Source: Botryllus schlosseri (lineage: Eukaryota). From it: a stretch of 64,000 nucleotides of DNA. Made by a program: the position numbers and the translations under genes. The notes beneath the pieces were generated by a model. It was not told where the DNA came from. It saw nothing but the letters and a program-made list of their open reading frames with translations, and searched no databases. Location: assembly GCA_051294905.1 (NCBI GenBank), contig CM119374.1:29884001-29948000 (forward strand), in the 5' to 3' direction. Below, piece by piece: positions 1 through 16,173 of the stretch (position 1 is the stretch's first letter; each line of letters opens with the position of its first letter).

Positions 1-3000
1 AGACGGAGACGTGCCAGTTTGGAGAAGAACTGCTCGAATTCGCATCTGCGGGTAAGCACGATCAAACTATAAGAACCATGTTGGCTGTTGGGATTGCCGC
101 AAATCACCGGCAATGTCAGAAAATTTGATAATGAAGTGTCTCTTAGTCTTTTTGAAGACGCTACGCCGAAGACTTGCATATTAGCGTGAGGGTTCGTCAG
201 GCAGGTAAAAGTTAAGAAGCGCTGTTGTAAAATATTGTTTAGAGAACAAGTATAAATCATCGTTTAAGCGTGCTTTAAACTATCGCGTTTTGTTACCAAT
301 TCCAATGCAACCTTATAGTCAATGAGTATGCGGTTCGAAAAGGTGAAGGTGCAAAGCTACGACATATTTGCATTCAGACTGTCAAGTGTCGGGTGGGGGT
401 CAGGATTGGTTCCGGTGCGGAAACGGCCGCTGCATCCAATCCAGTTTGACCTGCAACGGGGACGACGACTGCGGGGACTCGACAGACGAATATCCGTCCT
501 ACAATCAATCTTGCTCCAACACTGTGAGATAAATCGGTAGCCTACAGCGAAGAGGCTTGAAAACGGGATAGCTTGTTGTTCGCAGGGGGATTATATTTGT
601 GGGGTTCCTGTCCCCGCAAGTCCCACGAGTACTACACCCCCGAGATCGGACCGATATTTCCTCGCAATTCCGGGATTGGACGACTTTGCGTTAGGATTCG
701 ATCTACTGCGTGGTGAGTGAACGCGATAGAAATGGGGAGGGTCACACAATTGACTCTTCAGAAAGGGTCTCATTCCCAGTCTTGGACGGCTAGATAATTT
801 TAGTTGTCTACTTATAGACTAATTAGAGCGAAACGCAGGTAATCTAATTTGAGAAATATAATATACGGTCCAATTTTAATTGTAGGCTATAATCTAATAT
901 ATAATTTTCCTGAAAATACTACAGGAGAACTGTATCGTGTGATACGAGCCAAGCTCACTGAACAGACATTTGTCATTCCAGTGTTTAAATCAATGAAATC
1001 AACTTGATTTTTGTTGTATTTCTTTCTTATTCCAAATTTAATCCAATTTGCAAGTATTTACGAATTCAGTAATTCTAATTCTAATATCTTCAAAAACTGT
1101 GTATAGCTGTAACTGAAATTCGATATTTAATTTGCGATAGCTGAACCGCAGAAGCTTTATGAATTTATTTCAGGAAAGTCAGCGGCCCAAGTGTTGTCCA
1201 TGCGACCTTTCGGATCTTGTCGAAGAGTCGCCAAATCCGGAGAATCCGGATACTACTACAGACTGCCTCACAACGTGAACTCATTCGCTCAAGAACTCTC
1301 GACAAGCGACGGAATGGGGACGGTGCCTGCCTTGCCCTGTCACTTAATTATATCAACGCGACGTCTGTATATGTTGTTTCAGACGTTTCGCAGCGCGGCT
1401 GAAATTTCTGAGCTCAGATCTTCGCTGTTGGCGAACAATTACTTGTTCGGAGGGACTCTCGGAAATAACGACAGCGCTTCCGGTCTGACGCAATATCCGC
1501 TATTCCAGTCGATGATGATGTCGGAAATCGCGTCCAGGAATAAATTCTTCGGGATTTCGACGGATTTGAAAGTCAACATTTTCCAAGTAATACTATTTAT
1601 TTGAGGGGTTCCCAACCCTTTTGACGCCGTGGCCGATTTGAGAATTTTGAAAAGTTAATCGCGCCCTACTTTTTCAACCTTTTGAAATATACTATTCAAT
1701 TGGATATTGAAGTTCTGTACCTCCAAGAAGCTCATTTGAAGCTCTTCTCACAATGTCTTAATTTGTGGAAATCGGCGGTAGGGGAATTGAAAGTAAACTG
1801 GACATCAAGAAGTAGGTTATTACCGGATTAGTATTTTTATTAAACTGCAATTCATTTATTTTGTTATGCGGTAGTGGAATAGACAGATGATAAATTGATT
1901 CATACCCCCTAAAAAGGCTCATTGCGCCCTTAAGTTGGGAACCCCGGATTTACTTCTTTGCTATTTCATGGATAACGATAGGTTCCACATCCTGCACTGA
2001 CATAGCGACATGTACAGAAGACAGAAAAGCTCTGATAGCAATGTCTTCGCAGATAACTTTGAAAGGAGCGAGTTATCTCGAACTTTCAGACTCCTTCATC
2101 CAGCGTTTGTTCGATCTGCCGTCTCAAAACTACAGCCATCAGCGATACTTGGAGTTCGTGAAGGAGTTCGGTACTCACTACGTCACGTCGGGTTCGCTTG
2201 GAGGCCAATACAGACAACTGGCCATTTACGACTCGTAAGTCGCAGAACTGAGACTGCACGCAACAGTGGTGGTCAGTAACGCAGTACAAATCTACTTTTT
2301 CCTCGTTACTCAAACAGCGTATGCATTATTTACTAAATTGGATATATTTTAAGACTACTTGCACTCATCCTTGATCGTCAAAAACAGTCACAAAAACCTG
2401 TCCCTGAGCAGTGAGCAGATAATTACGAACCAGGTCGTTACAAAGTGCCAGGAAGACTGTTTATTTTGATCCGTTGTAGCGCGTGACTACAACCATAGAG
2501 ATCGTCAAAACGTATCGATCGGCAGCGACAAGGGTAGGGGCCGCCCTCCGATGGGAATCGAACCGGGGCCGCCCGATTTAATCGCTTATCGTCACCACTA
2601 CGCTATCTCCCCCGCAGATGCGCGTTGAGTCCATGATTAGGGGGTGACTGCGGATTGGCTCATAAAACACTTGGGGTTATCGAATCATTATGAGATTTGG
2701 GTATGATAAGAGATGTCAAATATCAACGATGGGTGTTTACGTGGTAAAAACGAAGCAACGTCTGCACGACCGCATATAACTGTGATTCCCAACCTTTTTG
2801 TCTTCATTCCCCACAAGACAAAACTTTTGTCATTATGGAGCAGATATTTGCTTGTTTGAGTACACAAGACACACAATCATACCGGTACGCAAGATACTCG
2901 CCTATAACTGCAACATAAAACGTATTGTGAACCGATATTGGTAAACCACAAAATTTAGCGAAAGCGTTATATCACGTCATACCGGTCGTGCTGGATGCGT

Positions 3001-6000
3001 TTGTAACGCCATGATTGGTTATCCGGAGTTAAAATGAGTTTTGTGAACAACGCGCAATATAATTTTCGATACATAGGCCTACATTCTAGAGCAGTTTACT
3101 GGTAACGTTAATCGCGCAGGTGTATCCGTAAATATGTAGACTGTCCTGTATATAGTGTTTAACAAATGCGTCTATTCCCCACCAGAAACCTTGGAATTCC
3201 CCACCGGTTGGGAACCACTGGCATAAAACAACAAGTCCTTAGATTTATTAGAACACGGGCATCATGCTCTGCGACAGGCTCACCCTTGACTCATTTCCTG
3301 AGGCTTGATGAAAACCAGGCAAATGCCATAAATTCTGCCATTGGTAAGCATTTGTTTATCGAGACGACAGATTTCATGTTGTCGGGAGAGGTCGTTCACA
3401 CTTTCATTTGGGTGCTTTGGAGGAGTAGACTTTTATCAGAATACGCGAACCAAACCTGTGCCTACAGGAGTTCATGTACCATCTAAAATTGTGCATTAAG
3501 CTTAAGCTCTCTCCTCGCCCCGATTATTCGAAATTAAAAAAATATTCACGATGTACCATTGAGCCCCTGTATCCATTGTGCCCACCTTCCGCTATATTGA
3601 GGATCTGTACCTTCAAGAGTTTTTTCAAATACTTTTATACTTGAGTAGAACTACTGATTAAACTCTGTCTGCTTCTTATTTCCGCAGATGCACGACCTTG
3701 AACGACCCGGACGTGGGTTACGAATTCCAAGTCGAGCCGCTCAAATTTCAAGAAAAAATTCTCTTCTGCGAGAAACAGACCTTGAAACTGGCTCTGAACC
3801 CCGGTTTGACTTTGCCGAGCGTTTGCTTGAAATCGAACGCAAGTGAGTTAATTGAGAACAGGACGTGACGTGACCTTCCCATGACATGCCGCCCTATTTC
3901 TCGTCGCATTCTTTTTCTATACTATCTTCTTTACTTTCATTCAGTGTGCATGCCTCCTCTTTACATCGCCTAGGCCAAGGTGGGTGTCAGATTCCATAGA
4001 CTATACTCCTTGTCGCTTCGACATCTTCCTGTCTTTTCATTGTATCGCATTTTTTGTGGTGTATTGAACTGATAAAATTGCTAATAAACCAATGATGATG
4101 ATGATGATGAGTTGGACAAATAGGAGAAAACTTTCAGCTTTGCAAATTATATTATAATTTTAGCTGTGCACACTTTGCAAAATTAGATTTGAATTCAGAA
4201 CGAATAACTGAATTCGCAAAAAAAAAATTTGGAAATTGAGATTAATTCTGGACTAGAAAGAAATACAACAAAAGTTCAAGTTCACTTCATATCAATTCCG
4301 AGTTCATTTTCGTAAGCACGAGAATGGCAAATATTTGTTCGCCGGGTTTGGCTCGTTTCGCACGATAGGGATATCCGGTAGCTTTTTTAGGGAATTTGAA
4401 TTGAAATGAAAGCATATAGAAACATATCACGAATAAGGTTCGACTTTGATTACCTCTATTTAGTAGCCTATGGGTTACCAAACGTCTTCCTTCAGGTGGA
4501 TTTGTCCTACTTTTTCAAGAAATGTCCCCCCTTCGCCCAAATGTCCTCCTTTGTGGAAGATTAGCCCTCCCTGTTAGCTTAAAATACCCCAAAAGAACCA
4601 TGAACTACGCGAAATGTGGGGCGAATGTACGAGAGATCTGTATTTCGGGAGTCGAGTTCGAAAAATGGCATTTATTATTAGTCAACTCGTCAAATATATA
4701 AGCTAGAAACGGGTATTTTGTGAGTCGAGTCGGAAAAATAAGGTATTTTCATTCAACCCATGCACCTATACCTGAGTGAATTTGAAAATCAGCCGTTTTC
4801 TCGTCGGCTGCAGTGAATTTTGCAGCCTGTGGAAAGTGTCCTCTTTAAAGGATCTCAAAATATGGTAGCCCTATCATTAGACACTAGAATAATCTATATG
4901 TTGCCCAAGTCTAGATGCGATGTAGCCCTTCCATAATACCCGTATTCTGCAGACAGTGTGGTGGATGACGCACTCTCTCGTGATGTCAGCATAATGGGAG
5001 GGAGCATATCCACTATCGCGGCTTTAATGCAGTCCGTGACTAGCGCCACTATGCAGCAATGGATGACATCAGTCGTAGACTATCCGACTCTGATACCACG
5101 AGACTTCAAACTTGAGAGGATTTCAAGGCGAGTTGCTATCAGTGTTTTGATTTGGTCAAAAATTTTATGAAGTAAAATTATAAAAGAAGAAAATTGAAAA
5201 AAAGACGAAGAAAATGATTGCCTGGAAACTCATCTATGCCGACTAACATTCAGAATACACCAAAATAGTCACCGTTCGTACTCGAGTAGATGCTTCGTAA
5301 ATTTCTATACGTGTACAATGTACATTAGGGCGGTTCAAAAATAACTTTTTTCGCGGATTCCAGCCATTCACTGATTAAATTGTCAGGTTACCCTTAAAAA
5401 CGCTGCACACCAAATTTAATTCAATTCTAACGAGTATAGGACTGCCGCAGATCCAATAAAAAATTTTAATTTAATAGAGAAAATAAAAAAAAATTCTACT
5501 TTTTCTCTCAACCCTATGGAATTGTTGAGCCGTCTTCAAAGGCGATGCGAAACACATTTGACTGAATTCCGACTAGTAGAAGCGGAGTTATGTGAGTTTT
5601 TCGTTGATAATTCTCGGATTGCCTTAATCGGCAGATAATCCTTGATCGGCAGATAATCCGAGAATTATCAACGATAAACTCACATAACTCCGCTGAAAGT
5701 ATAGCTTAAAATCATAAGTACGCGATTAAGTAAAACAAGTAACGAAATACTTCTACTTTTCGGAGTACTCCAAGTAGATTTTGCCTACTCGCACTATGCT
5801 TCCTCAAGTAGTTAATATTTACACTACTTCTACTTGACAGTTTTCAGTTTTTCAGGTCAAAATAGGCATAGACTACTTAGTTTTTTACTTACTTGTAAGT
5901 TGCTACTTCTACTCCTACAGAAATTTACGGAGTTACTTCCACTTTTACTTGAGCACCTCTGAACACCGAATTTCAAACCTTTCTGCTCAATATAAGTATA

Positions 6001-7624
6001 TGTAAGACTGTACCAAATTGTATTCGGGTCGTAAAATCTGCAATACTGGTCGGATCGAGCTGAATTTGGTACGCTAGAACGTGGAATTTTACGAAGTTTT
6101 CAAAAATTTCTGACTTGTCGAACAACAAATTTAAAAGCTCGTACATCGCATGGTGGAAATTAGAAAGTTTTTCAATTTTCACCCATAATATGTGTTTTGA
6201 TGTAGTTTGTTGCAAAATCCGTTACCGCAGTTAACCACGGAGCAAAGACATCGAATCAAGAAGTTTCTCGACAGAGTGATTGATGTGAGAACATTTTTAA
6301 ATGTAAATTTTTCGTATTTGATGATTATATGTCACTTTGGCAGACTTATTTGGAGCCTTACGATGCCGCCAATTTGTGCGAAGAATTTAGTGCGAAAGGC
6401 GCTTGCAAGGACACGTGCAGTCAATACGACGAGGTCTGTATATTGTTTCCGTGTATGACATCTTCACAGAGTTGGACTGCTACAACATTTTTAGCCATAT
6501 TAAATTAGAATTAGAATGATAGGTACACATTTGTTTCAAATTCGATTGCAATTAGAATTATAGCTACACGTTTTTTTTTAAATTTGATTAGAATTAGAAT
6601 TATATCTACACATTTTCTAAATTAGATAAGAATTAGAATGATAGCGACAGTTTTCTCCAAATTATATTAGAATTAGAATACTAGCTACATTTTTTTGCGA
6701 ATTAGCTCATAATTAGGATGATATTAACACACATTTTTTTCTAAATTCGTTTAGAATTGGAATAATATCGACACATTTTCTAAATTCGATTAGATTTAGA
6801 ATGATACCCACAGTTTTCTCTAAATTATATTAAAATTAGAATAATAGCTAAATTTTTGTTCCGAATTACATTAGAATTATTTCACTTGTTAAAATACTTT
6901 TAACTGAGGTGGTCAGTATCGAAGCACTTCTACTTTTCAAAGTACTTCAAGTAGATTCTGCCTACTTGAACTATACTTCCTTCAGTGGTTGTGAATCTAT
7001 GCTACTTCTACTTCTTCTTGATAGTTTTCCGTGTTTTTAGACAAAGCTAGGCCTACAAAACTTGAATTTAACCTTACTTGGAAATGTCTACTTCTACTTC
7101 TATACTTGATTACCGACCGTGACTACTTTGATCAGCCCTGCTTATTAATGGATTTAAATTCCTAATTAAAAATAATCAAATCATGGTTAGCATGATAATG
7201 GCAAACGTCTGTGCACCGTGCTTGGATCATTTCGCTCGATACAGTTCTCCTGTAGCATTTTTCGGAAAATCAATTAAAATGAGAGACTTAGGTTACCAGC
7301 ATTTCGCTCTAATTAGTTCAATTAAACAAGTAGAATTATCTAGTTGTGCGACTCTGGTTAGGACAGACTCTCCAATCACAGAATAGGATGTATCTGACGG
7401 GGACCGGCGGGCAGAACTACAGATGTTTGTGCGCTTGTTCGGGGCCGCCGTCTGACATCACATGCAGCGCGGGTAATACATCTTTTTTTCATACGAGAAT
7501 GTGACTTTAGTCGCACTGAATTGACATTATACACGCCCTCATCTGTTTTGCAGGTGAAAGAATATCTGATACGTCTCTCCTGTTATCGATATCACTGCTT
7601 TCCGCATTCTCTGCTCTGTATTGA
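1..7624 (+). CDS. Complement C6-like MACPF protein (LDL-receptor class A + MACPF + EGF-like + predicted GPI-anchor signal); 5' end lies outside the window
   Basis: Phase-consistent exons: 1-51, 378-523, 586-712, 1174-1322, 1383-1586, 2053-2234, 3688-3842, 4953-5127, 6206-6284, 6344-6433, 7382-7472, 7554-7624 (1518 nt from position 3, i.e. 505 aa + stop). LDLa motif [28 protein letters not shown]; MACPF entry [16 protein letters not shown]; MACPF signature [13 protein letters not shown]; MACPF exit [25 protein letters not shown]; EGF-like [16 protein letters not shown]. This domain order is that of terminal complement components. Confidence 0.9.
1603..1947. mobile_element. Non-autonomous hAT-type element (MITE)
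   Basis: TIR (G)AGGGGTTCCCAAC / GTTGGGAACCCC(GG); 8-bp TSD ATTTATTT / ATTTACTT (7/8). Confidence 0.75.
2460..2613 (-). mobile_element. tRNA-derived SINE
   Basis: Minus strand starts GGGGGAGATAGCGTAGTGG (Pol III A box), has GGTTCGATTCC (B box) about 40 nt later, then a non-tRNA body ending in AAAATAAAC. Confidence 0.7.
2780..3220. mobile_element. Non-autonomous hAT-type element (MITE)
   Basis: TIR CTGTGATTCCCAACC / GGTTGGGAACCACTG; TSD GCATATAA / GCATAAAA (7/8). Confidence 0.75.
3860..4112 (+). mobile_element. 3' tail of a LINE-like (CR1/L2-type) retroelement; dispersed family
   Basis: Motif CTCCTAGTCGCTTCGACACCTTCCTATCTTTTCATTGTATCGCA followed by AATAAA and an (ATG)n tail. Related copies at about 8700-8900(+), 9295-9545(-), 10790-11070(+), 21780-22070(+), 51100-51290(-), 52100-52420(-), 52490-52540(-), 52880-52970(+), 53070-53210(+), 60715-60790(+). 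Class inferred from 5' truncation and the simple-repeat tail. Confidence 0.6.
5128..6205 (+). other. GC-AG intron in the C6-like gene
   Basis: Donor AAG|GCGAGT at 5128 and acceptor TGTAG| at 6205 give a phase-2 junction reading ...ERIS-S-LLQNP..., the expected end of the MACPF domain. Confidence 0.75.
5326..5797. mobile_element. Truncated copy of the fold-back hAT MITE family (see 12430-13047)
   Basis: Begins TAGGGCGGTTCAAAAATAAC and follows the left arm and central hairpin of the 12430 element; most of the right arm is missing. Further fragments near 25270-25550, 27090-27360, 28380-28600, 32170-32640 and 56450-56820. Confidence 0.7.
6490..6880. repeat. AATTAGAATTAG-type degenerate tandem array (about 40-bp units), part of a dispersed intron-filling repeat family
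   Basis: Units like AAATTAGATTAGAATTAGAATGATAGCTACAC. Similar arrays, often with CAGACTTGGACAACTAG-like ends, at about 830-1130, 4140-4440, 18660-19187 continuing 21078-21360, 25600-25900, 38760-38930, 39480-39960, 43100-43340 and 46660-46945. Confidence 0.75.
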
Positions 7625-7731
7625 TCTAGGAAACAGACGTATTCATTTAATATTGATATATAAACGTTTTTCAATACCTCTGGTCCAGATTGAGAGAGTG
7701 GTAAATTTCGAACAATGAATATACTAGTCAG

Positions 7732-8691
7732 TGGGGATGGTGTGAACGCGAGGTTCACGTTCGCGTTCTGTGTGTGAACCTCAGAAATTTAGAGGTTCAC
7801 GTTCACAAACGAACCTTGGTAGGTTCTGCACTGTGAACCTTTTTCATAAATTACTATTTTCACTTCATTATAACATCTTTCGATGAAATTTACTGCATTT
7901 CAACTGCGGGCCACTCTATGCATAGCGTTGGCAGCATAGAAAAACCAACACTAAACGAGCATGCACCTTGAAAATCTCAAAAATTTTACTTGCTTCGCTA
8001 CAAAAGTTTGCTCGAAATATCCAGCTTTCCGTTTGTGAATATTTATTGACTCTCTGCTGTGAGCGTGACCCGCAATCACAAAACATCAAGAGCGAAATAC
8101 ACTACATGTAGGATTGTAGGTAGTCAGCGAATGATACTTATTCAACCAATCAGTGAAATTGATATCGTTGTCTGATGTAAAATATCTAGCAGGCGTACGG
8201 GGTCAATCCTGCTTGCACATGTTTATTTTATCATAAAAACTAAATCCGTGCGATCGCGGTGTTGGCTACTGCTGTATAACTTGGTAATGAGGTAATAGCG
8301 GTAGCAAGAATAGAAACTCGGACGCCGAATACAATGTCCGGTCTGGCCTAGACCGTCAAGGCGTAAGCTTTAATTCTCTTGCAAGTCCTTTTTGCAATTG
8401 TTGGCAACGAGACGGAAGATATTGATTTTATCGGATTATTATACCATTCGATTGCCCCAGTTGATACATTAGGCGACGTTAAAAACATCAATATGTAGCC
8501 TACTTCAGCATCGTGACATTATGTGGCCTGCGTTGTCGCTATAGGTATCGTGTACATTAAAACAGGCTATTACTTCGCTGAAATGTATAGGGTTGGAATT
8601 AGCAATATTCACGTTCGTGTTCACACAGAACCTTTCAAAAAGGTTCGCGTTCACACTAACCTGAACCTTTCAGAGGTTCACGCCATCCCTA
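7732..8691. mobile_element. Non-autonomous hAT-type element, 960 bp, about 110 nt after the C6-like stop codon
   Basis: TIR TGGGGATGGTGTGAAC / GTTCACGCCATCCCTA; perfect TSD CTAGTCAG; subterminal GTTCAC/GAACC repeats. Confidence 0.9.
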
Positions 8692-8991
8692 CTAGTCAGC
8701 CCGCAAGATTAATAACCGGACCTCGATCTGACAATATCGACCTTGCCTAGGATACATGCGTCATTCATTTTCATCTCTAGTTCTTTTATGTTATCCCTTA
8801 AATTTCTTTCCATCTGATTGCAAAGACTACTCCAAGTCGGTTTGACATCTTCCTCTCTTTTCAGTATCGCAATCTTGTTATGTTTTGAAATGATGATATT
8901 AGTATTAAACTGGCACTGATCGTCTCTATATTAGGCCTATTGTTTTACAATTGGATGGCTGGTCGATAGAACTGATCACCAGTATTTCGCA

Positions 8992-9030
8992 CAGAGATAT
9001 CAATAGAACTAGAAGTTCTAGATATCCCTG
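8992..9030. mobile_element. Ultra-short (39 bp) TIR element
   Basis: CAGAGATATCAATAGAACTAGAAGTTCTAGATATCCCTG flanked by a perfect 8-bp direct repeat ATTTCGCA (8984-8991 and 9031-9038). Confidence 0.8.
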
Positions 9031-9589
9031 ATTTCGCATTTTCCGAGTTAGGCAAATTGAAACCCAAGCAGCGTTTCACAGTCCTATTTTCTACAGTTTT
9101 GCGAACAGTAGGAATCACTCAGACACAGGATTCGACAACTGTAGCAAACTGTAAAATGATCTAGTGTTTATCTTACTTAGTCAGATTTATATTAGTCATT
9201 TTGCAGCGACGTTCATTTGCAATCTTTTAGTGGAGGCGATTACATCACATTTCAATTTATCGTTAACCTTTTCACCATTTCAATATGGAACACCACAATT
9301 AGACTGAGATACGGTGAAAAGATAGGAAGGTGTCTACACGACTAGGAGCAGTGTTTGAAACCTGACGCCCTCCCGGCCTAGGGCCTTGGGCGACGTAAAA
9401 AGGAGGCATGCACAATTCACAATGCACATGCACACTGAATGAGAGTTAAAGAAGTTAATATAAAAGGCAGGCGACAAAAAGAGGAGGCATGTGTCGGAAG
9501 GCGAGATCAAGATGTCAAGACGAATTCCGGTAAACTTGAGGACACATTCGCGCAAAGGCATGTGCTGATTCGCCGAGGATAGTTCAATA

Positions 9590-10513
9590 CAGTGTTGGGA
9601 TGACTCGAGTCATATGACTTGACTCGAGTCAGACTCGAGTCAACTTTTTCGTATGACTTGACTTGACTCGAGTCACTCGGAGCAAAATTTACGAGTCAAT
9701 TCAAGTCATCAAGTAAATGATTTTGAATAAATCACTGTATCTTGTGTATGTTCGGATAGTTCGAGATACGCCTGTGTCACTTGTGTGAGCAACCATAGCC
9801 ATTAACTGATTCTACGTTACACTATCATCCATTGTTAGAGCATAAATAAATTGACCGCAAACTAAACGATCACAGCTTACGTTGTCAAAGTTGACTAATC
9901 TAAATAGCAATGTGTCTCTGTTTCTTAGACGGCTCGATGGTTACGTTGCGCAGTGCTCACATTTACCAACCCTCTTATGATTTAAATCGAACAAATATGG
10001 TTTGTGCGTTTAAATTCTCACGGATGTGTAGATTGGTAGTGTAGTCTATTGTGCCATATTAATTTGTTTCAACTTCTTGAAGCTTCGTATTAGGTCCCAT
10101 ATTTTGGTTGATATTAACTGACTCTAGAATGTAGCTGTACAATTACTCACGTATTTTATTACCGGTACTACGTGTGCGTGAGGGATACAACGTCTTTTTG
10201 CATGTATATTTAACTAGATATCCGTTATTTGATTCAAGATAAATGATAAATTAATCCGTCTTTCATACAGCTAGCAAAATTTAATGACTTTGAATCATCA
10301 CTCATACTTCGAAAATTCAATTTGACTTGAATTGTGACTTGACTCGTGACTTGACTTGACTCGACTTGACTCGAGTCACCTCCAAAAAAACGAGTGACTT
10401 GACTTGACTCGAGTCACCTTTGAAAATTGATTGACTTGACTTGACTCGAGTCAAAATCTGCAATGACTCGAGATGACTCGTGACTCGAAGGTAGTGACTT
10501 GATCCCAACACTG
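9590..10513. mobile_element. Non-autonomous hAT-type element with GACTCGAGTC/GACTT subterminal arrays (copy 1)
   Basis: TIR CAGTGTTGGGAT / ATCCCAACACTG; TSD GTTCAATA / GTTCAAGA (7/8). Confidence 0.9.
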
Positions 10514-12429: not shown

Positions 12430-13047
12430 TAGGGCTGTTCAAAAATAACCTTTTTTCCTGAATCTTGCTGGTTACTTGATTAAATCGTTAGGTTGCCTTA
12501 AAAAACGACGCACACCAAATTTGAATTCATTCCAACCAATATTCGCGGGTTTCGTAGAGTTTGAAAATTTTGAATTTGCCTAGAAATGCAAAAAAATTTT
12601 TTTTTCAAATTTTTCTGCCAACCCCATGAAATTGTTGCGCTGTCTTCAAAGACGATGCAAAACAAATTTGACTCAATTCGAAGCCGTAGAAGTGGAGTTA
12701 TTTCAGTTTTTCTTCGATAATTCTGGGATTATCCTTGATTGTTGGATCATCCCAGAATTATCATCAAAAAACTTGAATAACTCCGCTTCTGCAGCTTGGA
12801 ATTGAGTCAAATTTGTTTTCCATCGTTTTTGAAGACAGCGCAACAATTTCATAAGGTTGAAAGGAAAATCTGACTAAAATTTTTTTTGCATTTTCAAGCA
12901 AATTCAAAATTTTCAAACTCTACGAAATCCGCGAATATTGGTTGGAATGTATTCAAATTTGGCGTGCGTCGTTTTTTAAGGCAACCTAACGATTTAATCA
13001 AGTAACCTGCAAGATTCAGGAAAAAAGGTTATTTTTGAACAGCCCTA
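12430..13047. mobile_element. Fold-back hAT-type MITE, 618 bp, almost entirely a single inverted repeat
   Basis: TIR TAGGGCTGTTCAAAAATAACC; arms of about 300 bp with scattered mismatches; perfect TSD ATGAATAT. The host repeat occurs uninterrupted elsewhere (TTTCAATATGAATATGCTATTCAATTG near 35300). Confidence 0.92.
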
Positions 13048-13254
13048 ATGAATATATTATTCAATTGTGTAGGCTTATTAAAGCTCTTTACCTCCAACAA
13101 GAGTCTTCAATCACTAATTTGTTATCTACGCGGATGCTGGAATGTTGATTTAAAACAAATGACAATCATACTTTTAATTACAATCAATGATGACCCAATG
13201 ATTTTTCGATTACAGAACATAGAATGCCAATTTCGTTACAGTACAATCCTTGAA

Positions 13255-16173
13255 ATGGAGCTAGGAAATGGATTTCACAAACCGCTCACATCCCCAAACG
13301 CTGACGAGCACCAACAAATGCTCCTGTACTTTGACAAGCTGAAGTCTTCCGACCAAGGATTGGAGTATTCCGTCACCGAGTTATTAAACGAGGAGGGCAA
13401 GTCACAGCAAGAAGAACTTGTGTTTTTGCACTGGAAAGTTGTGGAATCGCATGTAAAGCAACGTAGCGATTCATTACCAATGCATATCAGACGGTGGTTG
13501 AAAGAGGCTTTACTTGAATGGATTAGAAAACACGCTAATGGGAGCTACAATGTACCGACATACCTTCGAAACAAAGCAGCTCAGGTCTTTGCATTGGTAT
13601 TTGCACATGAGTTCCTGCTAACATGGCCAACGATGATTTTGGATACCATGAAAATTTGTCTTGAAGCGCCAAAACCGAGTGGTGTCGATTTTTATTTGCG
13701 TGTCTTGCTGGCAATTGATGTGGAAGTTGTCGATCGCGTGATCACACACACGGAGGCAGAACAGGCTCGCAACACTAAAATTAAGGACACAATGCGTGAA
13801 GTATGCATTCCTGATATGGTGGAGTCTTGGTATAATTTACTGGTCGTGAATACGGAAAAACTGGATAAAAACATCACGTCAATGTGCATGAATGTTGTCG
13901 GATGTTACATCGAATGGATTGATATCAACATGATCGCGAACGAGAGATTTTTGACCATTATTTTCTCTTTTCTTACTGAAAAAACGAATTCGGAAGTCCG
14001 CGAAGCTACGTGCGAGTGTTTGAGAGAAATTGCATGTAAAGGAATGTCTCCTCAAGACAAAGTACGTCTGGTCCAAGTCCTTTGGCCTGAAATTCGAAAA
14101 TACTGCCATGTAAGACCGGAAGAAGACATCGATTTTGTGATCAAATTATCGCGATTAGTGGGCGGCATCGGTTCAACGTTAGTCTTCACTTTTAATAAGT
14201 TACTAAAATGCGAAAATACGCCTGAAACTCAACAAAACATGCACGCAGTCAAAGATTCTATCAATGACAAAATAGAATTTTGTTTCAAATTCCTATCTCA
14301 CGACGATGACGACGTTTCACAGCAATGCGTGCAGGTGGCGTTGGATTACGTTGATTTTTTGAAGAAAAAAAACTGGCTGGATGATGCAGAGAAGCAAAAC
14401 ATGGTGACTTTATTCGGGATTTTGGTGCGAAAGTCAAAATATGACGAAGAATACTGTTTTGAGAACGAGGGTGAGGACGAAGCGGAATTTAAAGAATATT
14501 TGAAATCGCTGAAAAATATTTACGAAAACCTAATTCTGCTGGAACCAAAGATTTTACAGACACTCCTACTTGAATTGCTACGTTCAACTCTGCCAAACTG
14601 GCAAATAGTAGACTTCAGCACCGTTGAAGTCACAATCAGACTATTGTACTTACTAGGAGAATCGTTAGCCGTAAATCTCGGAACATTATTCTCAAACGAT
14701 TCCAAATCTTTGTTGCAAGAAATGATGGCTGTGCTCACATCAAGCGGTGTCTGCGACCACACACATCCATATGTGCGTCTTATGTTTTTTGAAACTGTAG
14801 TCCGTTACGACAGATTTTTCATACTGCAAAGCACCGAGGCAAAGGTCTTGTTTCAAGTAACGAAAGCGTTTTTGGATATCCGCGGTATTAAATCCGATAA
14901 TCCAACTATCAGAAGCCGTTGTGCTTATCTGTTATCTAGATTCGTTAAAACTACGTCCAAAGCATTGCAGAATTTCTGCGGTGAGCTTCTACATGATATT
15001 CAAGACTTGCTTGTTTTGAGTCCATCGAACAGCATTGAACGAATTCTTTCAAACGACGACCAACTGTTCATATACGAACTCGCCGGTACTTTAATTGTCA
15101 ACAGCGATTCTGATGTCAAAAATGCAATGATGACTAATTTATTGCGCCCTCTCGTCGAAGGATTTCCAATTTTACTCACAAAAATGCATGAAATCGCGAG
15201 TATTGAAGACAAAAACGGAGATCAAAATCGGATTGAAAGCACAGCCATGGCAAAAACAATCAACTACGCAATGTCATACGCAAGCCGTACTAGCAAAGCA
15301 TTCAGTAACAAACACACCATGGCTCAAGCTAACTGTTCCGCAGTATACACGGAGACCTTACGAATATTTTTATCAGGATTTGAAGTCGAAATACACCATG
15401 ACATCATCCATTCCGGTATCAGGCAGTATTTGCATCGTATGGTGATTTGTTTGGAGGATGAAGTCTTACCTTTTGTGCCTGTCGCGGTACATAATCTTTT
15501 GAAACATTGCGACGCACGCGCGTTACATCAGTTTATTCCGTTGATTAATCAAATCGTGAACAAGTTTAAAAAAGTGGTCTCGCCTTTTCTGGTACAGATT
15601 TTCATGCCTGTTGTAAAAACAGTTTTCAAAATACTATCGGAAGACCGTGAATCTGAAGACTTGAAAACTGTGCGACGTACCTATTTCCAATTCATCCACG
15701 CGATCGTATCTAACAATCTGTCCGACGTGATTCTCTCTCAACAGCGTCAAGACTCTGAAATGGTCCTAATCACTTTAAGGCAAGGGGCTGTGGATTACCC
15801 TGACCCTTCAGCTCAAAAAGTCTGCTTCAGCATATTCCACAAGTTCGTTGAATCATGGAAAGTCAACAAAAACGAGGTTCTCCGTGATTTAATCATGCAT
15901 ATCGTAATACCGTCGTGTTTTCAAGCTCCCATGAGGCCGACCTTTGACCTCACAGACGCTCAGACGGTTCTTGTGTTGAAACAAACATCATCTATGATGA
16001 AAGACTTGTATGTAGCTTTTGGGGATGAAATTATAGTCGCACTGCAAGCTTACCTGCCAACAATAGAATTTTCTGCGCCGTTGACCGAAGAATATTGCCA
16101 AGCCTTGAAGCAACTCGATGTGAAACAATTTAGGAATTACACAAAAGCTTTTTTCCAACGTGGCAGGGGATGA
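13255..16173 (+). CDS. XPOT: Exportin-T (tRNA exportin), single coding exon, 972 aa
   Basis: Uninterrupted ORF with recognisable exportin-T segments (LRNKAAQVFALVF, GVDFYLRVLLAIDVEVVDR, RNTKIKDTMRE, IRSRCAYLLSRFVK, DAQTVLVL). Start set at ATG 13255, 14 nt after a TTTCGTTACAG acceptor; length then fits known exportin-T (about 960 aa). Confidence 0.95.
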   Translation: MELGNGFHKPLTSPNADEHQQMLLYFDKLKSSDQGLEYSVTELLNEEGKSQQEELVFLHWKVVESHVKQRSDSLPMHIRRWLKEALLEWIRKHANGSYNVPTYLRNKAAQVFALVFAHEFLLTWPTMILDTMKICLEAPKPSGVDFYLRVLLAIDVEVVDRVITHTEAEQARNTKIKDTMREVCIPDMVESWYNLLVVNTEKLDKNITSMCMNVVGCYIEWIDINMIANERFLTIIFSFLTEKTNSEVREATCECLREIACKGMSPQDKVRLVQVLWPEIRKYCHVRPEEDIDFVIKLSRLVGGIGSTLVFTFNKLLKCENTPETQQNMHAVKDSINDKIEFCFKFLSHDDDDVSQQCVQVALDYVDFLKKKNWLDDAEKQNMVTLFGILVRKSKYDEEYCFENEGEDEAEFKEYLKSLKNIYENLILLEPKILQTLLLELLRSTLPNWQIVDFSTVEVTIRLLYLLGESLAVNLGTLFSNDSKSLLQEMMAVLTSSGVCDHTHPYVRLMFFETVVRYDRFFILQSTEAKVLFQVTKAFLDIRGIKSDNPTIRSRCAYLLSRFVKTTSKALQNFCGELLHDIQDLLVLSPSNSIERILSNDDQLFIYELAGTLIVNSDSDVKNAMMTNLLRPLVEGFPILLTKMHEIASIEDKNGDQNRIESTAMAKTINYAMSYASRTSKAFSNKHTMAQANCSAVYTETLRIFLSGFEVEIHHDIIHSGIRQYLHRMVICLEDEVLPFVPVAVHNLLKHCDARALHQFIPLINQIVNKFKKVVSPFLVQIFMPVVKTVFKILSEDRESEDLKTVRRTYFQFIHAIVSNNLSDVILSQQRQDSEMVLITLRQGAVDYPDPSAQKVCFSIFHKFVESWKVNKNEVLRDLIMHIVIPSCFQAPMRPTFDLTDAQTVLVLKQTSSMMKDLYVAFGDEIIVALQAYLPTIEFSAPLTEEYCQALKQLDVKQFRNYTKAFFQRGRG

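What the first reader, a model, noticed from the sequence alone, without database searches (positions are those of the whole stretch)
6344..7624. Terminal-complement-like (LDLa-MACPF-EGF) protein with a C-terminal GPI-anchor-type signal
Seen: after the EGF-like exon the gene ends ...[29 protein letters not shown]-stop, i.e. small residues (S,A,G), a short polar spacer and a 16-residue hydrophobic end with no cytoplasmic tail. Established: this is the usual layout of a GPI attachment signal; vertebrate C6-C9 and perforin-1 are soluble, while perforin-2/MPEG1 is tethered by a transmembrane helix. Inference: this is a surface-tethered complement-like MACPF protein. It could be a contact-dependent effector, a nucleator or regulator of an invertebrate MAC-like complex, or a self-protecting decoy. 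I do not know of a described GPI-anchored C6-like protein, but I cannot exclude one.
Basis: partly seen in the sequence, partly recalled or inferred. Interest (0 to 1): 0.75.

Follow-up and report, generated by a model that had tools for sequence, protein, structure and literature searches.

The report
Sea-squirt C9-like pore protein, lipid-anchor tail
This is a real, expressed sea-squirt (Botryllus) gene for a second, undescribed complement C9-like pore-forming protein. It ends in a short greasy tail typical of a GPI lipid-anchor signal, and its sea-squirt relatives end the same way, so these proteins may be held on the cell surface rather than secreted.

Summary
Observation confirmed.

- **What the gene is.** The genome is Botryllus schlosseri or a sibling clade. 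Another locus, on contig C5, encodes the published BsITCCP ("BsC9", PMC11593599). The window gene is a second, undescribed paralogue: 44% identical and sister to BsITCCP in a tree.
- **Architecture.** Signal-peptide exon upstream of the window, a degenerate TSP1-like module, LDLa, MACPF and an EGF-like module.
- **The tail is conserved in kind, not in sequence.** Ours, BsITCCP, Styela clava "C9-like" and a fourth tunicate transcript all end the same way. After the last EGF cysteine come small residues, a Ser/Thr-rich spacer, 12-15 hydrophobic residues and 0-8 further residues.
- **Exon structure.** The tail has its own final mini-exon after a phase-1 intron in all three genomic loci examined.
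- **Controls.** A third Botryllus C6-like gene, vertebrate C6/C8β and amphioxus C6-like lack such a tail.
- **Limits.** Simple GPI rules fit best for the window protein (ω Ser552, 7-residue spacer, tail reaching the C-terminus). No trained predictor or biochemistry was available, and a short transmembrane anchor cannot be excluded for the relatives.
- **Literature.** The BsITCCP paper calls the protein secreted and does not mention the tail.

Verdict: a known family with a plausible, unreported membrane tether.

The parts
1..51 (+). 3' end of the second TSP1-like exon. The exon starts at L003:9931, 70 bases upstream of the window. The earlier exons lie at L003:9366-9417 (signal peptide), 9474-9554 (in-frame, possibly included) and 9613-9701.
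   Evidence: Collinear tblastn matches to Styela P0001 and to P0002; splice sites read.
378..523 (+). LDLa exon
   Evidence: Pfam Ldl_recept_a, E = 4e-10.
586..712 (+). Exon for the linker and the start of the MACPF region
   Evidence: 54% identical to P0001 residues 146-192; GT-AG borders.
1174..1322 (+). MACPF exon (…GSCRRV…YYYRLP…)
   Evidence: tblastn. The 60-nt intron 1323-1382 falls in alignment gaps of both orthologues.
1383..1586 (+). MACPF exon covering the first membrane-hairpin (TMH1) region
2053..2234 (+). MACPF exon with the signature [15 protein letters not shown]
   Evidence: Pfam MACPF, E = 6e-14.
3688..3842 (+). MACPF exon covering the second hairpin (TMH2) region
   Evidence: Piece of the X1 contig; joint 3842/4953 seen in X1, X2 and one X14 read.
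4953..5127 (+). MACPF exon (…IMGGSIS…), with a GC donor
   Evidence: Weak Pfam MACPF match; X1 joint 5125/6204 with 2 ambiguous bases, which equals 5127/6206.
6206..6284 (+). Exon for the C-terminal helix of MACPF
   Evidence: X1 and X2 joint 6284/6344.
6344..6433 (+). EGF-like module, first half
   Evidence: X1 and X2 joint 6433/7382. Its cysteines align with the EGF cysteines of C6/C8.
7382..7472 (+). EGF-like module, second half (…[19 protein letters not shown])
7473..7553 (+). Last intron (81 nt, phase 1). It is spliced out in the X1 contig and retained in the X2 contig, which would give a tail-less end ...[10 protein letters not shown]-stop.
   Evidence: tables 5 and 8; reading.
7554..7624 (+). 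Terminal coding mini-exon: spacer ERISDT plus the 16-residue hydrophobic end [16 protein letters not shown] and the TGA stop. This is the GPI-attachment-type signal, with predicted ω site Ser552 in the motif C-S-A-G.
   Evidence: X1 joint 7472/7554; rule-based scan; hydropathy.
7625..7763 (+). 3' UTR, minimum extent. The contig ends where a high-copy repeat begins.
   Evidence: The X1 contig piece 7553-7763 spans it. No AATAAA nearby.

Best explanation
The gene is a second Botryllus paralogue of the tunicate 'invertebrate terminal complement complex protein' (ITCCP, C9-like). An N-terminal signal peptide takes the protein into the ER. It has a degenerate TSP1-like module, LDLa, a full MACPF domain with two roughly 60-residue hairpin regions, and an EGF-like module.

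Its last mini-exon encodes a GPI-attachment-type signal. The inference is that the GPI transamidase cuts at or next to Ser552, directly after the last EGF cysteine, and replaces the 24-residue tail with a GPI lipid. The mature pore-former would then be tethered by its EGF end to the outer leaflet of the producing haemocyte's membrane, either at the cell surface or on the lumenal face of its vacuoles.

By analogy with membrane-tethered perforin-2/MPEG1, the tether would keep the protein at the cell-target contact site and keep it from acting at a distance. It would act either on an apposed target membrane or after release by a phospholipase or protease. A transcript that keeps the last intron could supply a soluble form.

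Shown: the gene, its splicing, the domain content, the paralogy and the conservation of the tail type. Inferred: GPI attachment, localisation and pore activity.
For: - **Splicing and C-terminus:** confirmed by the 2027-nt RNA contig.
- **Domains:** LDLa and MACPF by Pfam.
- **Family:** the orthologue's closest solved relatives are C8α, C6, C8β and C9.
- **Paralogy:** sister to BsITCCP with 98/97 support.
- **Hydropathy:** the 19-residue Kyte-Doolittle mean is 1.54, below the classical 1.6 transmembrane threshold. The 11-residue mean is 2.34.
- **Conservation:** the same tail type is present in BsITCCP, Styela clava C9-like and P0002 with little sequence identity.
- **Exon structure:** the tail sits on its own terminal exon after a phase-1 intron in three loci.
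- **Contrast:** the tail is absent from the Botryllus C3-contig C6-like gene, from vertebrate C6/C8β and from amphioxus.
- **Selection:** three of four coding differences in the RNA contigs are synonymous.
- **Biology:** BsITCCP is made only in cytotoxic morula cells, which closely contact perforated yeast (PMC11593599).
- **Precedent:** MPEG1 has a tethered form plus a secreted form, with the tether proposed as a safety and trafficking device (PMC7593815).
Against: - No trained GPI predictor, signal-peptide predictor or experiment was available.
- The ω site would sit immediately after a probably disulphide-bonded cysteine, with no flexible linker before it.
- In BsITCCP, Styela and P0002 the hydrophobic run is followed by K/R and further residues (3 after the K or R in Styela and P0002, 7 after the R in BsITCCP). 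That resembles a stop-transfer sequence. Styela and P0002 also reach 19-residue hydropathy of 1.9-2.0, which is compatible with a transmembrane helix.
- The tail exon is pyrimidine-rich, a composition that by itself tends to encode Leu, Ser and Phe.
- The authors of the BsITCCP paper treat the protein as secreted.
- Expression of the window gene was near zero in the two bulk RNA read sets sampled.
Confidence: 0.5

Rival explanations
1. The hydrophobic end is a short single-pass (type I) membrane anchor with a minimal or absent cytosolic tail, not a GPI signal. The protein would still be cell-tethered, but by its own peptide, as perforin-2/MPEG1 is.
For: In three of the four tunicate proteins a basic residue and 3-7 further residues follow the hydrophobic run. 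Styela and P0002 reach 19-residue hydropathy of 1.92 and 2.04, above the 1.6 threshold.
Against: The strictly hydrophobic runs are only 12-15 residues long. The window protein has no residue after the run, and its 19-residue hydropathy is 1.54; BsITCCP's is 1.47. That is short for spanning a plasma membrane. The small-residue triplet plus polar spacer upstream is a GPI feature, not a transmembrane feature.
Confidence: 0.2
2. The tail does not anchor the mature protein. It would be a cleaved C-terminal propeptide, or a sorting or retention signal for the vacuoles of cytotoxic haemocytes. Alternatively the working product is the soluble form from the intron-retaining transcript. Either way the active protein is secreted and polymerises like C9 or perforin, as the BsITCCP paper assumes.
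For: The published model for BsITCCP is secretion into a synapse-like cleft. The anti-C9 antibody detected a band of about 59 kDa in that study. The X2 contig retains the last intron, which predicts a tail-less product.
Against: No localisation data distinguish secreted from anchored protein. The X2 contig also starts inside an upstream intron, so it may be unfinished pre-mRNA. Conservation of a hydrophobic C-terminal exon across a paralogue pair and two other species argues that the tail is functional. The commonest function of such tails on signal-peptide proteins is GPI addition (established knowledge).
Confidence: 0.2
3. The C-terminus is a gene-model artefact: the real transcript ends elsewhere or continues into further domain exons.
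For: None found, apart from the retained-intron contig in X2.
Against: The X1 contig carries the exact junctions and 140 nt of 3' UTR. No TSP1, CCP or FIMAC-like reading frames lie between 7624 and the exportin-T gene. The orthologous mRNA (BsITCCP, obtained by 3' RACE), the NCBI Styela model and the P0002 transcript all end the same way.
Confidence: 0.02

Closest known systems
BsITCCP / 'BsC9' of Botryllus schlosseri (GenBank PQ126347.1; PMC11593599)
   Same: Same genome (locus G000:C5:13305001-13335000) and the same exon-intron plan. Same architecture: signal peptide, degenerate TSP1-like module, LDLa, MACPF, EGF-like module and a hydrophobic tail exon. Sister in the tree.
   Different: Only 44% identical, and the window gene sits on the longer branch. 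BsITCCP's tail is followed by RKINSISS, whereas ours ends with the hydrophobic run. The paper reports a single MACPF transcript in the species and does not mention the tail or this paralogue.
Vertebrate terminal complement components C6, C7, C8α, C8β and C9
   Same: The TSP1-LDLa-MACPF-EGF core. C8α, C6 and C8β are the best solved-structure matches of the orthologue (E about 1e-17). The EGF cysteines are conserved.
   Different: The vertebrate proteins are soluble plasma proteins. After the EGF module they either end (C9) or continue into TSP1, CCP and FIM modules. None has a hydrophobic C-terminal tail. Identity to ours is only 22-27%.
Perforin-2 / MPEG1
   Same: A MACPF immune effector that is held on the producer's membrane by its C-terminus. 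It also has a secreted truncated isoform. The tether is thought to control trafficking and prevent unintended lysis, and the prepore is aimed at an adjacent membrane (PMC7593815).
   Different: MPEG1 uses a true transmembrane helix plus a cytosolic tail and has a MABP/P2 domain. Ours has neither, and it belongs to the C6-C9 lineage, with LDLa.
CD59 (GPI-anchored inhibitor of the membrane attack complex)
   Same: A GPI-anchored protein of the terminal complement pathway on self cells (PMC12313776).
   Different: CD59 has an unrelated Ly6/uPAR fold and no MACPF domain. It blocks pores rather than forming them.
Amphioxus and ascidian 'C6-like' proteins (TSP1-TSP1-LDLa-MACPF-EGF±TSP1; PMC11312191), including the third Botryllus gene at G000:C3:5859501-5863500
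   Same: Invertebrate-chordate members of the terminal-complement family. The Botryllus C3-contig gene shows Pfam TSP1 x2, LDLa and MACPF, plus an EGF-like end.
   Different: They have clear TSP1 domains and hydrophilic C-termini with no tail exon.

Membership tests
Terminal complement component-like MACPF proteins (C6-C9 / tunicate ITCCP) | MACPF domain with the Y/F-G-T-H-Y/F…G-G signature | tested here: met
   Pfam PF01823, E = 6e-14, on exon 2053-2232. The motif [15 protein letters not shown] is present.
Terminal complement component-like MACPF proteins (C6-C9 / tunicate ITCCP) | LDL-receptor class A module directly N-terminal to MACPF | tested here: met
   Pfam PF00057, E = 4e-10, on exon 380-523.
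Terminal complement component-like MACPF proteins (C6-C9 / tunicate ITCCP) | EGF-like cysteine module directly after MACPF | tested here: met
   Pfam EGF is not detected. However, the cysteines of exons 6344-6433 and 7382-7472 align with the invariant EGF cysteines of C6, C8β and amphioxus. The module carries a 12-17-residue tunicate-specific insert.
Terminal complement component-like MACPF proteins (C6-C9 / tunicate ITCCP) | N-terminal thrombospondin type 1 repeat | tested here: inconclusive
   There is no Pfam TSP_1 hit on our exon or on P0001/P0002. Against that, solved-structure alignments of P0001 start within the TSP1 region of C8α and C6. Styela and P0002 also keep W-S-x-W-S, which both Botryllus paralogues have lost.
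Terminal complement component-like MACPF proteins (C6-C9 / tunicate ITCCP) | Groups with described family members in a tree | tested here: met
   In the maximum-likelihood tree, ours plus BsITCCP has 98/97 support. The tunicate clade has 100/100 support against C6, C8β and amphioxus (8 rows, midpoint root only).
Terminal complement component-like MACPF proteins (C6-C9 / tunicate ITCCP) | Forms oligomeric membrane pores, or is recruited by C5b/C3-dependent assembly | not testable with these tools
   The only indirect hint is that the two hairpin regions are about 60 residues each, as in lytic MACPFs. The AlphaFold model of the orthologue was too poor to use (mean pLDDT 41).
GPI-anchored proteins | N-terminal ER signal peptide | tested here: inconclusive
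   A start exon was found upstream of the window (MSRPTYLVAYAILGFLY, with a 12-residue hydrophobic core). It matches BsITCCP's signal-peptide exon in position and phase. It was not covered by laid reads, and no SignalP run was possible.
GPI-anchored proteins | ω site with small residues at ω and ω+2 | tested here: met
   S552-A-G directly after the last EGF cysteine. Alternatives are C551-S-A and S558-D-T (rule-based scan).
GPI-anchored proteins | Polar spacer of about 5-10 residues after ω+2 | tested here: met
   ERISDTS, 7 residues.
GPI-anchored proteins | Hydrophobic stretch of about 10-20 residues reaching the C-terminus, with no cytosolic tail | tested here: met
   [15 protein letters not shown] runs to the last residue. 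The 11-residue hydropathy is 2.34 and the 19-residue hydropathy is 1.54. In the three relatives, 4-8 residues follow the run.
GPI-anchored proteins | Positive call by a trained predictor (NetGPI, PredGPI, big-PI) | not testable with these tools
GPI-anchored proteins | Release by PI-PLC, or lipid/ethanolamine found on the mature C-terminus | not testable with these tools
   This is a bench experiment.
Perforin-2/MPEG1-type transmembrane-tethered MACPF | Transmembrane helix of about 20 residues followed by a cytosolic tail, plus a MABP/P2 domain | tested here: not met
   The hydrophobic run is 15-16 residues and no residues follow it. The 19-residue hydropathy is below 1.6. There is no domain between the EGF module and the tail, and LDLa is present instead.

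The most novel reading that the evidence does not exclude
The C9-like pore-formers of stolidobranch sea squirts are GPI-anchored on cytotoxic haemocytes and kill by contact. The chordate 'terminal complement' lineage would then have begun as, or passed through, a cell-bound weapon of the perforin-2 kind. Vertebrates would have turned it into a humoral, C5b-nucleated complex later. Alternative splicing of the tail exon would switch between tethered and soluble forms.
Probability: 0.3. Interest if true: 0.75.

Novelty: new variant of a known kind. Interest (0 to 1): 0.5.

Why it matters
Whether invertebrate chordates have a lytic complement arm is an open question. The only functional study in tunicates (BsITCCP, 2024) assumes a single secreted C9-like protein. 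This work changes three things:

- The species has at least three terminal-complement-like genes, not one.
- The two ITCCP-type genes and their relatives in other sea squirts carry a conserved C-terminal anchor-type signal that the literature searched here does not mention.
- The anchor claim can be tested directly, with PI-PLC release and surface staining of morula cells.

If the anchor is real, killing by these cells would be contact-dependent and self-limiting. That fits the synapse-like contacts seen by electron microscopy. It would also give the C6-C9 lineage a membrane-bound stage comparable to perforin-2.

Tried and rejected
- **Pfam on single exons.** EGF and TSP1 were not detected, so these modules rest on alignment only.
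- **Protein searches.** The representative-library search with exon 1176-1586 found only three relatives. Two word-index searches with P0001 and with the P0001+P0002 profile added only vertebrate C6/C8, amphioxus and an LDL receptor. No Ciona or other tunicate sequences turned up, so how far the tail extends beyond these four proteins is unknown.
- **Structure prediction.** AlphaFold2 on Styela P0001 with a 6-sequence alignment gave mean pLDDT 40.7. It was unusable, so no fold search was run. The only observation is that the tail is drawn as an isolated low-confidence helix. Where the EGF end lies relative to the hairpins could therefore not be measured. The cis-versus-trans argument rests on published statements that the EGF module lies in the top globular part of poly-C9 (PMC4742998).
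- **Raw RNA reads.** Runs X14 and X18 gave almost no coverage of the exons, so expression level, cell type and isoform ratio are unknown.
- **Literature.** Searches for a GPI-anchored MACPF or C6-like protein found none. That covers only the open-access library.
- **Rejected ideas.** Downstream TSP1/CCP/FIMAC exons are not there. A pseudogene is ruled out by the intact frame, the spliced RNA and the mostly synonymous differences.
Full report
**1. What is in the sequence**

The window is AT-rich, intron-rich animal DNA. Frame-by-frame translation and splice-site reading give a plus-strand gene with 12 exons inside the window. It starts upstream, and I fetched the preceding 10 kb as L003.

- 6344-6433, phase 0.
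- 7382-7472, ending in phase 1.
- 7554-7624.

The encoded end is …[41 protein letters not shown]-stop.

Upstream of the window lie:
- A start exon (L003:9366-9417, MSRPTYLVAYAILGFLY).
- An in-frame 81-nt exon that may or may not be included (L003:9474-9554).
- Two exons of a cysteine-rich TSP1-like module.

The model gives 576 residues, or 603 with the extra exon. All introns are GT-AG except one GC-AG intron (5128-6205).

**2. RNA evidence**

I laid two contig-type runs and two raw-read RNA runs on 3600-9599.

- **X1.** One 2027-nt contig (depth 18.6) carries the joints 3842/4953, 5127/6206, 6284/6344, 6433/7382 and 7472/7554, and continues to 7763. About 1.2 kb of the contig lies 5' of 3688, which fits a full-length mRNA.
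- **X2.** A 587-nt contig has 6284/6344 and 6433/7382 spliced. It keeps the last intron and begins inside the intron before 6206. This is either unfinished pre-mRNA or a minor isoform that would end …[13 protein letters not shown]-stop, without the tail.
- **X14 and X18.** These bulk RNA read sets hardly cover the exons, so expression there is low.
- **Selection.** Of four coding differences between the contigs and the genome, three are synonymous.
- **Downstream.** No other exon is joined to 7472. The next gene is an intronless exportin-T reading frame at 13039-16170.

**3. Identity of the gene**

Pfam finds LDLa (4e-10) and MACPF (6e-14) on single exons. A search of the representative library with exon 1176-1586 found two close relatives:
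- P0001, annotated "complement component C9-like [Styela clava]".
- P0002, a 2070-nt transcript contig from run SRR32906200.

Both are collinear with our exons. The closest solved structures to P0001 are C8α, C6, C8β, C9 and C7.

The literature search led to Ballarin et al. 2024 (PMC11593599), who describe BsITCCP in Botryllus schlosseri. It is a 590-residue LDLa-MACPF protein made only in cytotoxic morula cells and induced by zymosan in a C3-dependent way. Its sequence is in their Figure S1. It matches, including the 3' UTR, a second MACPF locus of this very genome on contig C5. The genome is therefore B. schlosseri or a sibling clade.

The window gene on contig C4 is a different gene. It is 44% identical to BsITCCP, sister to it with 98/97 support, and on the longer branch. 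Styela is the next relative and P0002 lies outside.

A third locus, on contig C3, is one long reading frame with TSP1-TSP1-LDLa-MACPF and a canonical EGF end. The statement in the paper that the species has only one MACPF sequence therefore does not hold for the genome.

**4. The tail**

All four ITCCP-type tunicate proteins end in the same way. After the last EGF cysteine come one to three small residues, a Ser/Thr-rich polar stretch, and 12-15 hydrophobic residues. The endings after that run differ:

| Protein | After the hydrophobic run |
|---|---|
| Ours | nothing (Tyr is the last residue) |
| Styela P0001 | KNSW |
| P0002 | RNLQ |
| BsITCCP | RKINSISS |

The tails share little sequence, which is the pattern expected for a signal read by its physical character.

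In the three genes for which I have genomic DNA, the tail is a separate last coding exon. It follows a phase-1 intron that splits the Gly codon after the last cysteine: ours at 7472|7554, BsITCCP at c5 15939|16011, and Styela in L009 near 15138.

The Botryllus C3-contig C6-like gene, sturgeon and cod C6, frog C8β and amphioxus C6-like have no such tail. After the EGF module they stop or go on into TSP1.

A simple rule scan gives the following for our protein:
- ω at Ser552 (S-A-G).
- A 7-residue spacer.
- A hydrophobic run to the C-terminus.
- 11-residue hydropathy of 2.34, but 19-residue hydropathy of only 1.54, under the classical 1.6 transmembrane threshold. BsITCCP is similar at 1.47.

Styela and P0002 reach 1.9-2.0 and have a basic residue after the run. 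For them a short transmembrane anchor is a fair alternative.

**5. How it most likely works**

- **Shown.** This is a transcribed, intact, ER-type C9-like MACPF gene whose mRNA ends in a conserved anchor-type exon.
- **Inferred, about 50%.** The tail is exchanged for a GPI lipid, leaving the EGF end of the molecule on the outer leaflet of the producing cell.
- **Geometry.** Published poly-C9 structures place the EGF module in the top globular part, away from the membrane-inserted end of the barrel (PMC4742998). With almost no linker between EGF and the anchor, insertion into the cell's own membrane looks awkward.
- **Precedent.** Perforin-2/MPEG1 is tethered, has a secreted isoform, is thought to be restrained by its tether, and has a prepore aimed at an adjacent membrane (PMC7593815).
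- **Fit with biology.** A tethered ITCCP would match the close contacts between morula cells and perforated yeast reported for Botryllus.

Rivals are a short peptide anchor (0.2), a non-anchoring tail or a mainly soluble isoform (0.2), and a model artefact (0.02).

**6. Comparison with what is known, and novelty**

The family is known. It appears as BsITCCP, as NCBI "C9-like", and as "C6-like/C8" of ascidians in PMC11312191. Membership in the C6-C9/ITCCP family is met on MACPF, LDLa, the EGF cysteines and tree position. The TSP1 feature is only a degenerate remnant.

None of the searches for a GPI-anchored MACPF or C6-like protein returned such a report, and the BsITCCP paper has no occurrence of GPI, transmembrane or hydrophobic. 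The new points are:
- The second ITCCP paralogue.
- The third terminal-complement-like gene.
- The conserved anchor-type tail.

I rate this a new variant of a known kind, of moderate interest. The claim is cheap to test and would change how the tunicate "lytic pathway" is pictured, but at present it is a sequence-based prediction.

**7. Limits**

- No trained predictors were available.
- Only four tailed sequences are in hand, and there is no Ciona data.
- The AlphaFold model was unusable.
- The 5' exons are not confirmed by reads.
- The 3' end is undefined, with no AATAAA nearby.
- Earlier notes of this scan on this genome concerned other genes and did not affect the reading.

Noticed in passing
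G000:C3:5859501-5863500, minus strand (L006:1503-3113): A third terminal-complement-like gene in this genome. It is one uninterrupted reading frame with TSP1-TSP1-LDLa-MACPF and a canonical EGF end (…GRMCEKSARIL-stop), with no hydrophobic tail. Together with the window gene, it contradicts the published statement that B. schlosseri has a single MACPF sequence.
   Followed up: partly
window 13039-16170 (+): A 1044-residue reading frame without introns that matches Exportin-T (Pfam E = 5e-88) and Xpo1. An intronless copy in an intron-rich genome may be a retrogene, or simply a single-exon gene.
   Followed up: partly
window 7473-7553, and L003:9474-9554: Two possible isoform switches. Retention of the last intron in the X2 contig would give a tail-less protein. 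An in-frame 81-nt exon between the signal-peptide exon and the TSP1-like exon may be optional. BsITCCP has a 30-nt exon at the same place and phase.
   Followed up: partly
window 3875-4110, 7734-8200 and 8600-8800: High-copy repeats with word depths in the thousands in RNA-type runs and many loose ends. One lies inside intron 3843-4952. The others lie just after the 3' UTR, where the transcript contig stops.
   Followed up: no
window about 6480-6880 (intron 6434-7381): A run of roughly 50-60-bp units built around 'aattagaattagaat…', looking like a degenerate tandem array or satellite inside the intron.
   Followed up: no
window 5128-6205: A GC-AG intron (donor AG|GCGAGT), confirmed by the X1 contig joint.
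   Followed up: yes
L003:9613-9701 with window 1-51; P0001 residues 41-52; P0002 residues 53-64: The N-terminal module keeps the thrombospondin W-S-x-W-S motif in Styela and P0002. In the window gene it reads E-W-T-N-F-S-S, and in BsITCCP V-P-D-D-F-G-V. This may be why the BsITCCP paper reports that TSP1 is absent.
   Followed up: partly
L009 (Styela clava OZ123521.1:1542764-1564452), about 15430-15700: The NCBI model of the Styela orthologue splices its last three to four codons (…K-NSW) from a further tiny exon. Without that splice the frame reads on for 26 residues (SKYFLLFFIHVP…). The exact C-terminus in Styela therefore depends on an unverified junction.
   Followed up: no
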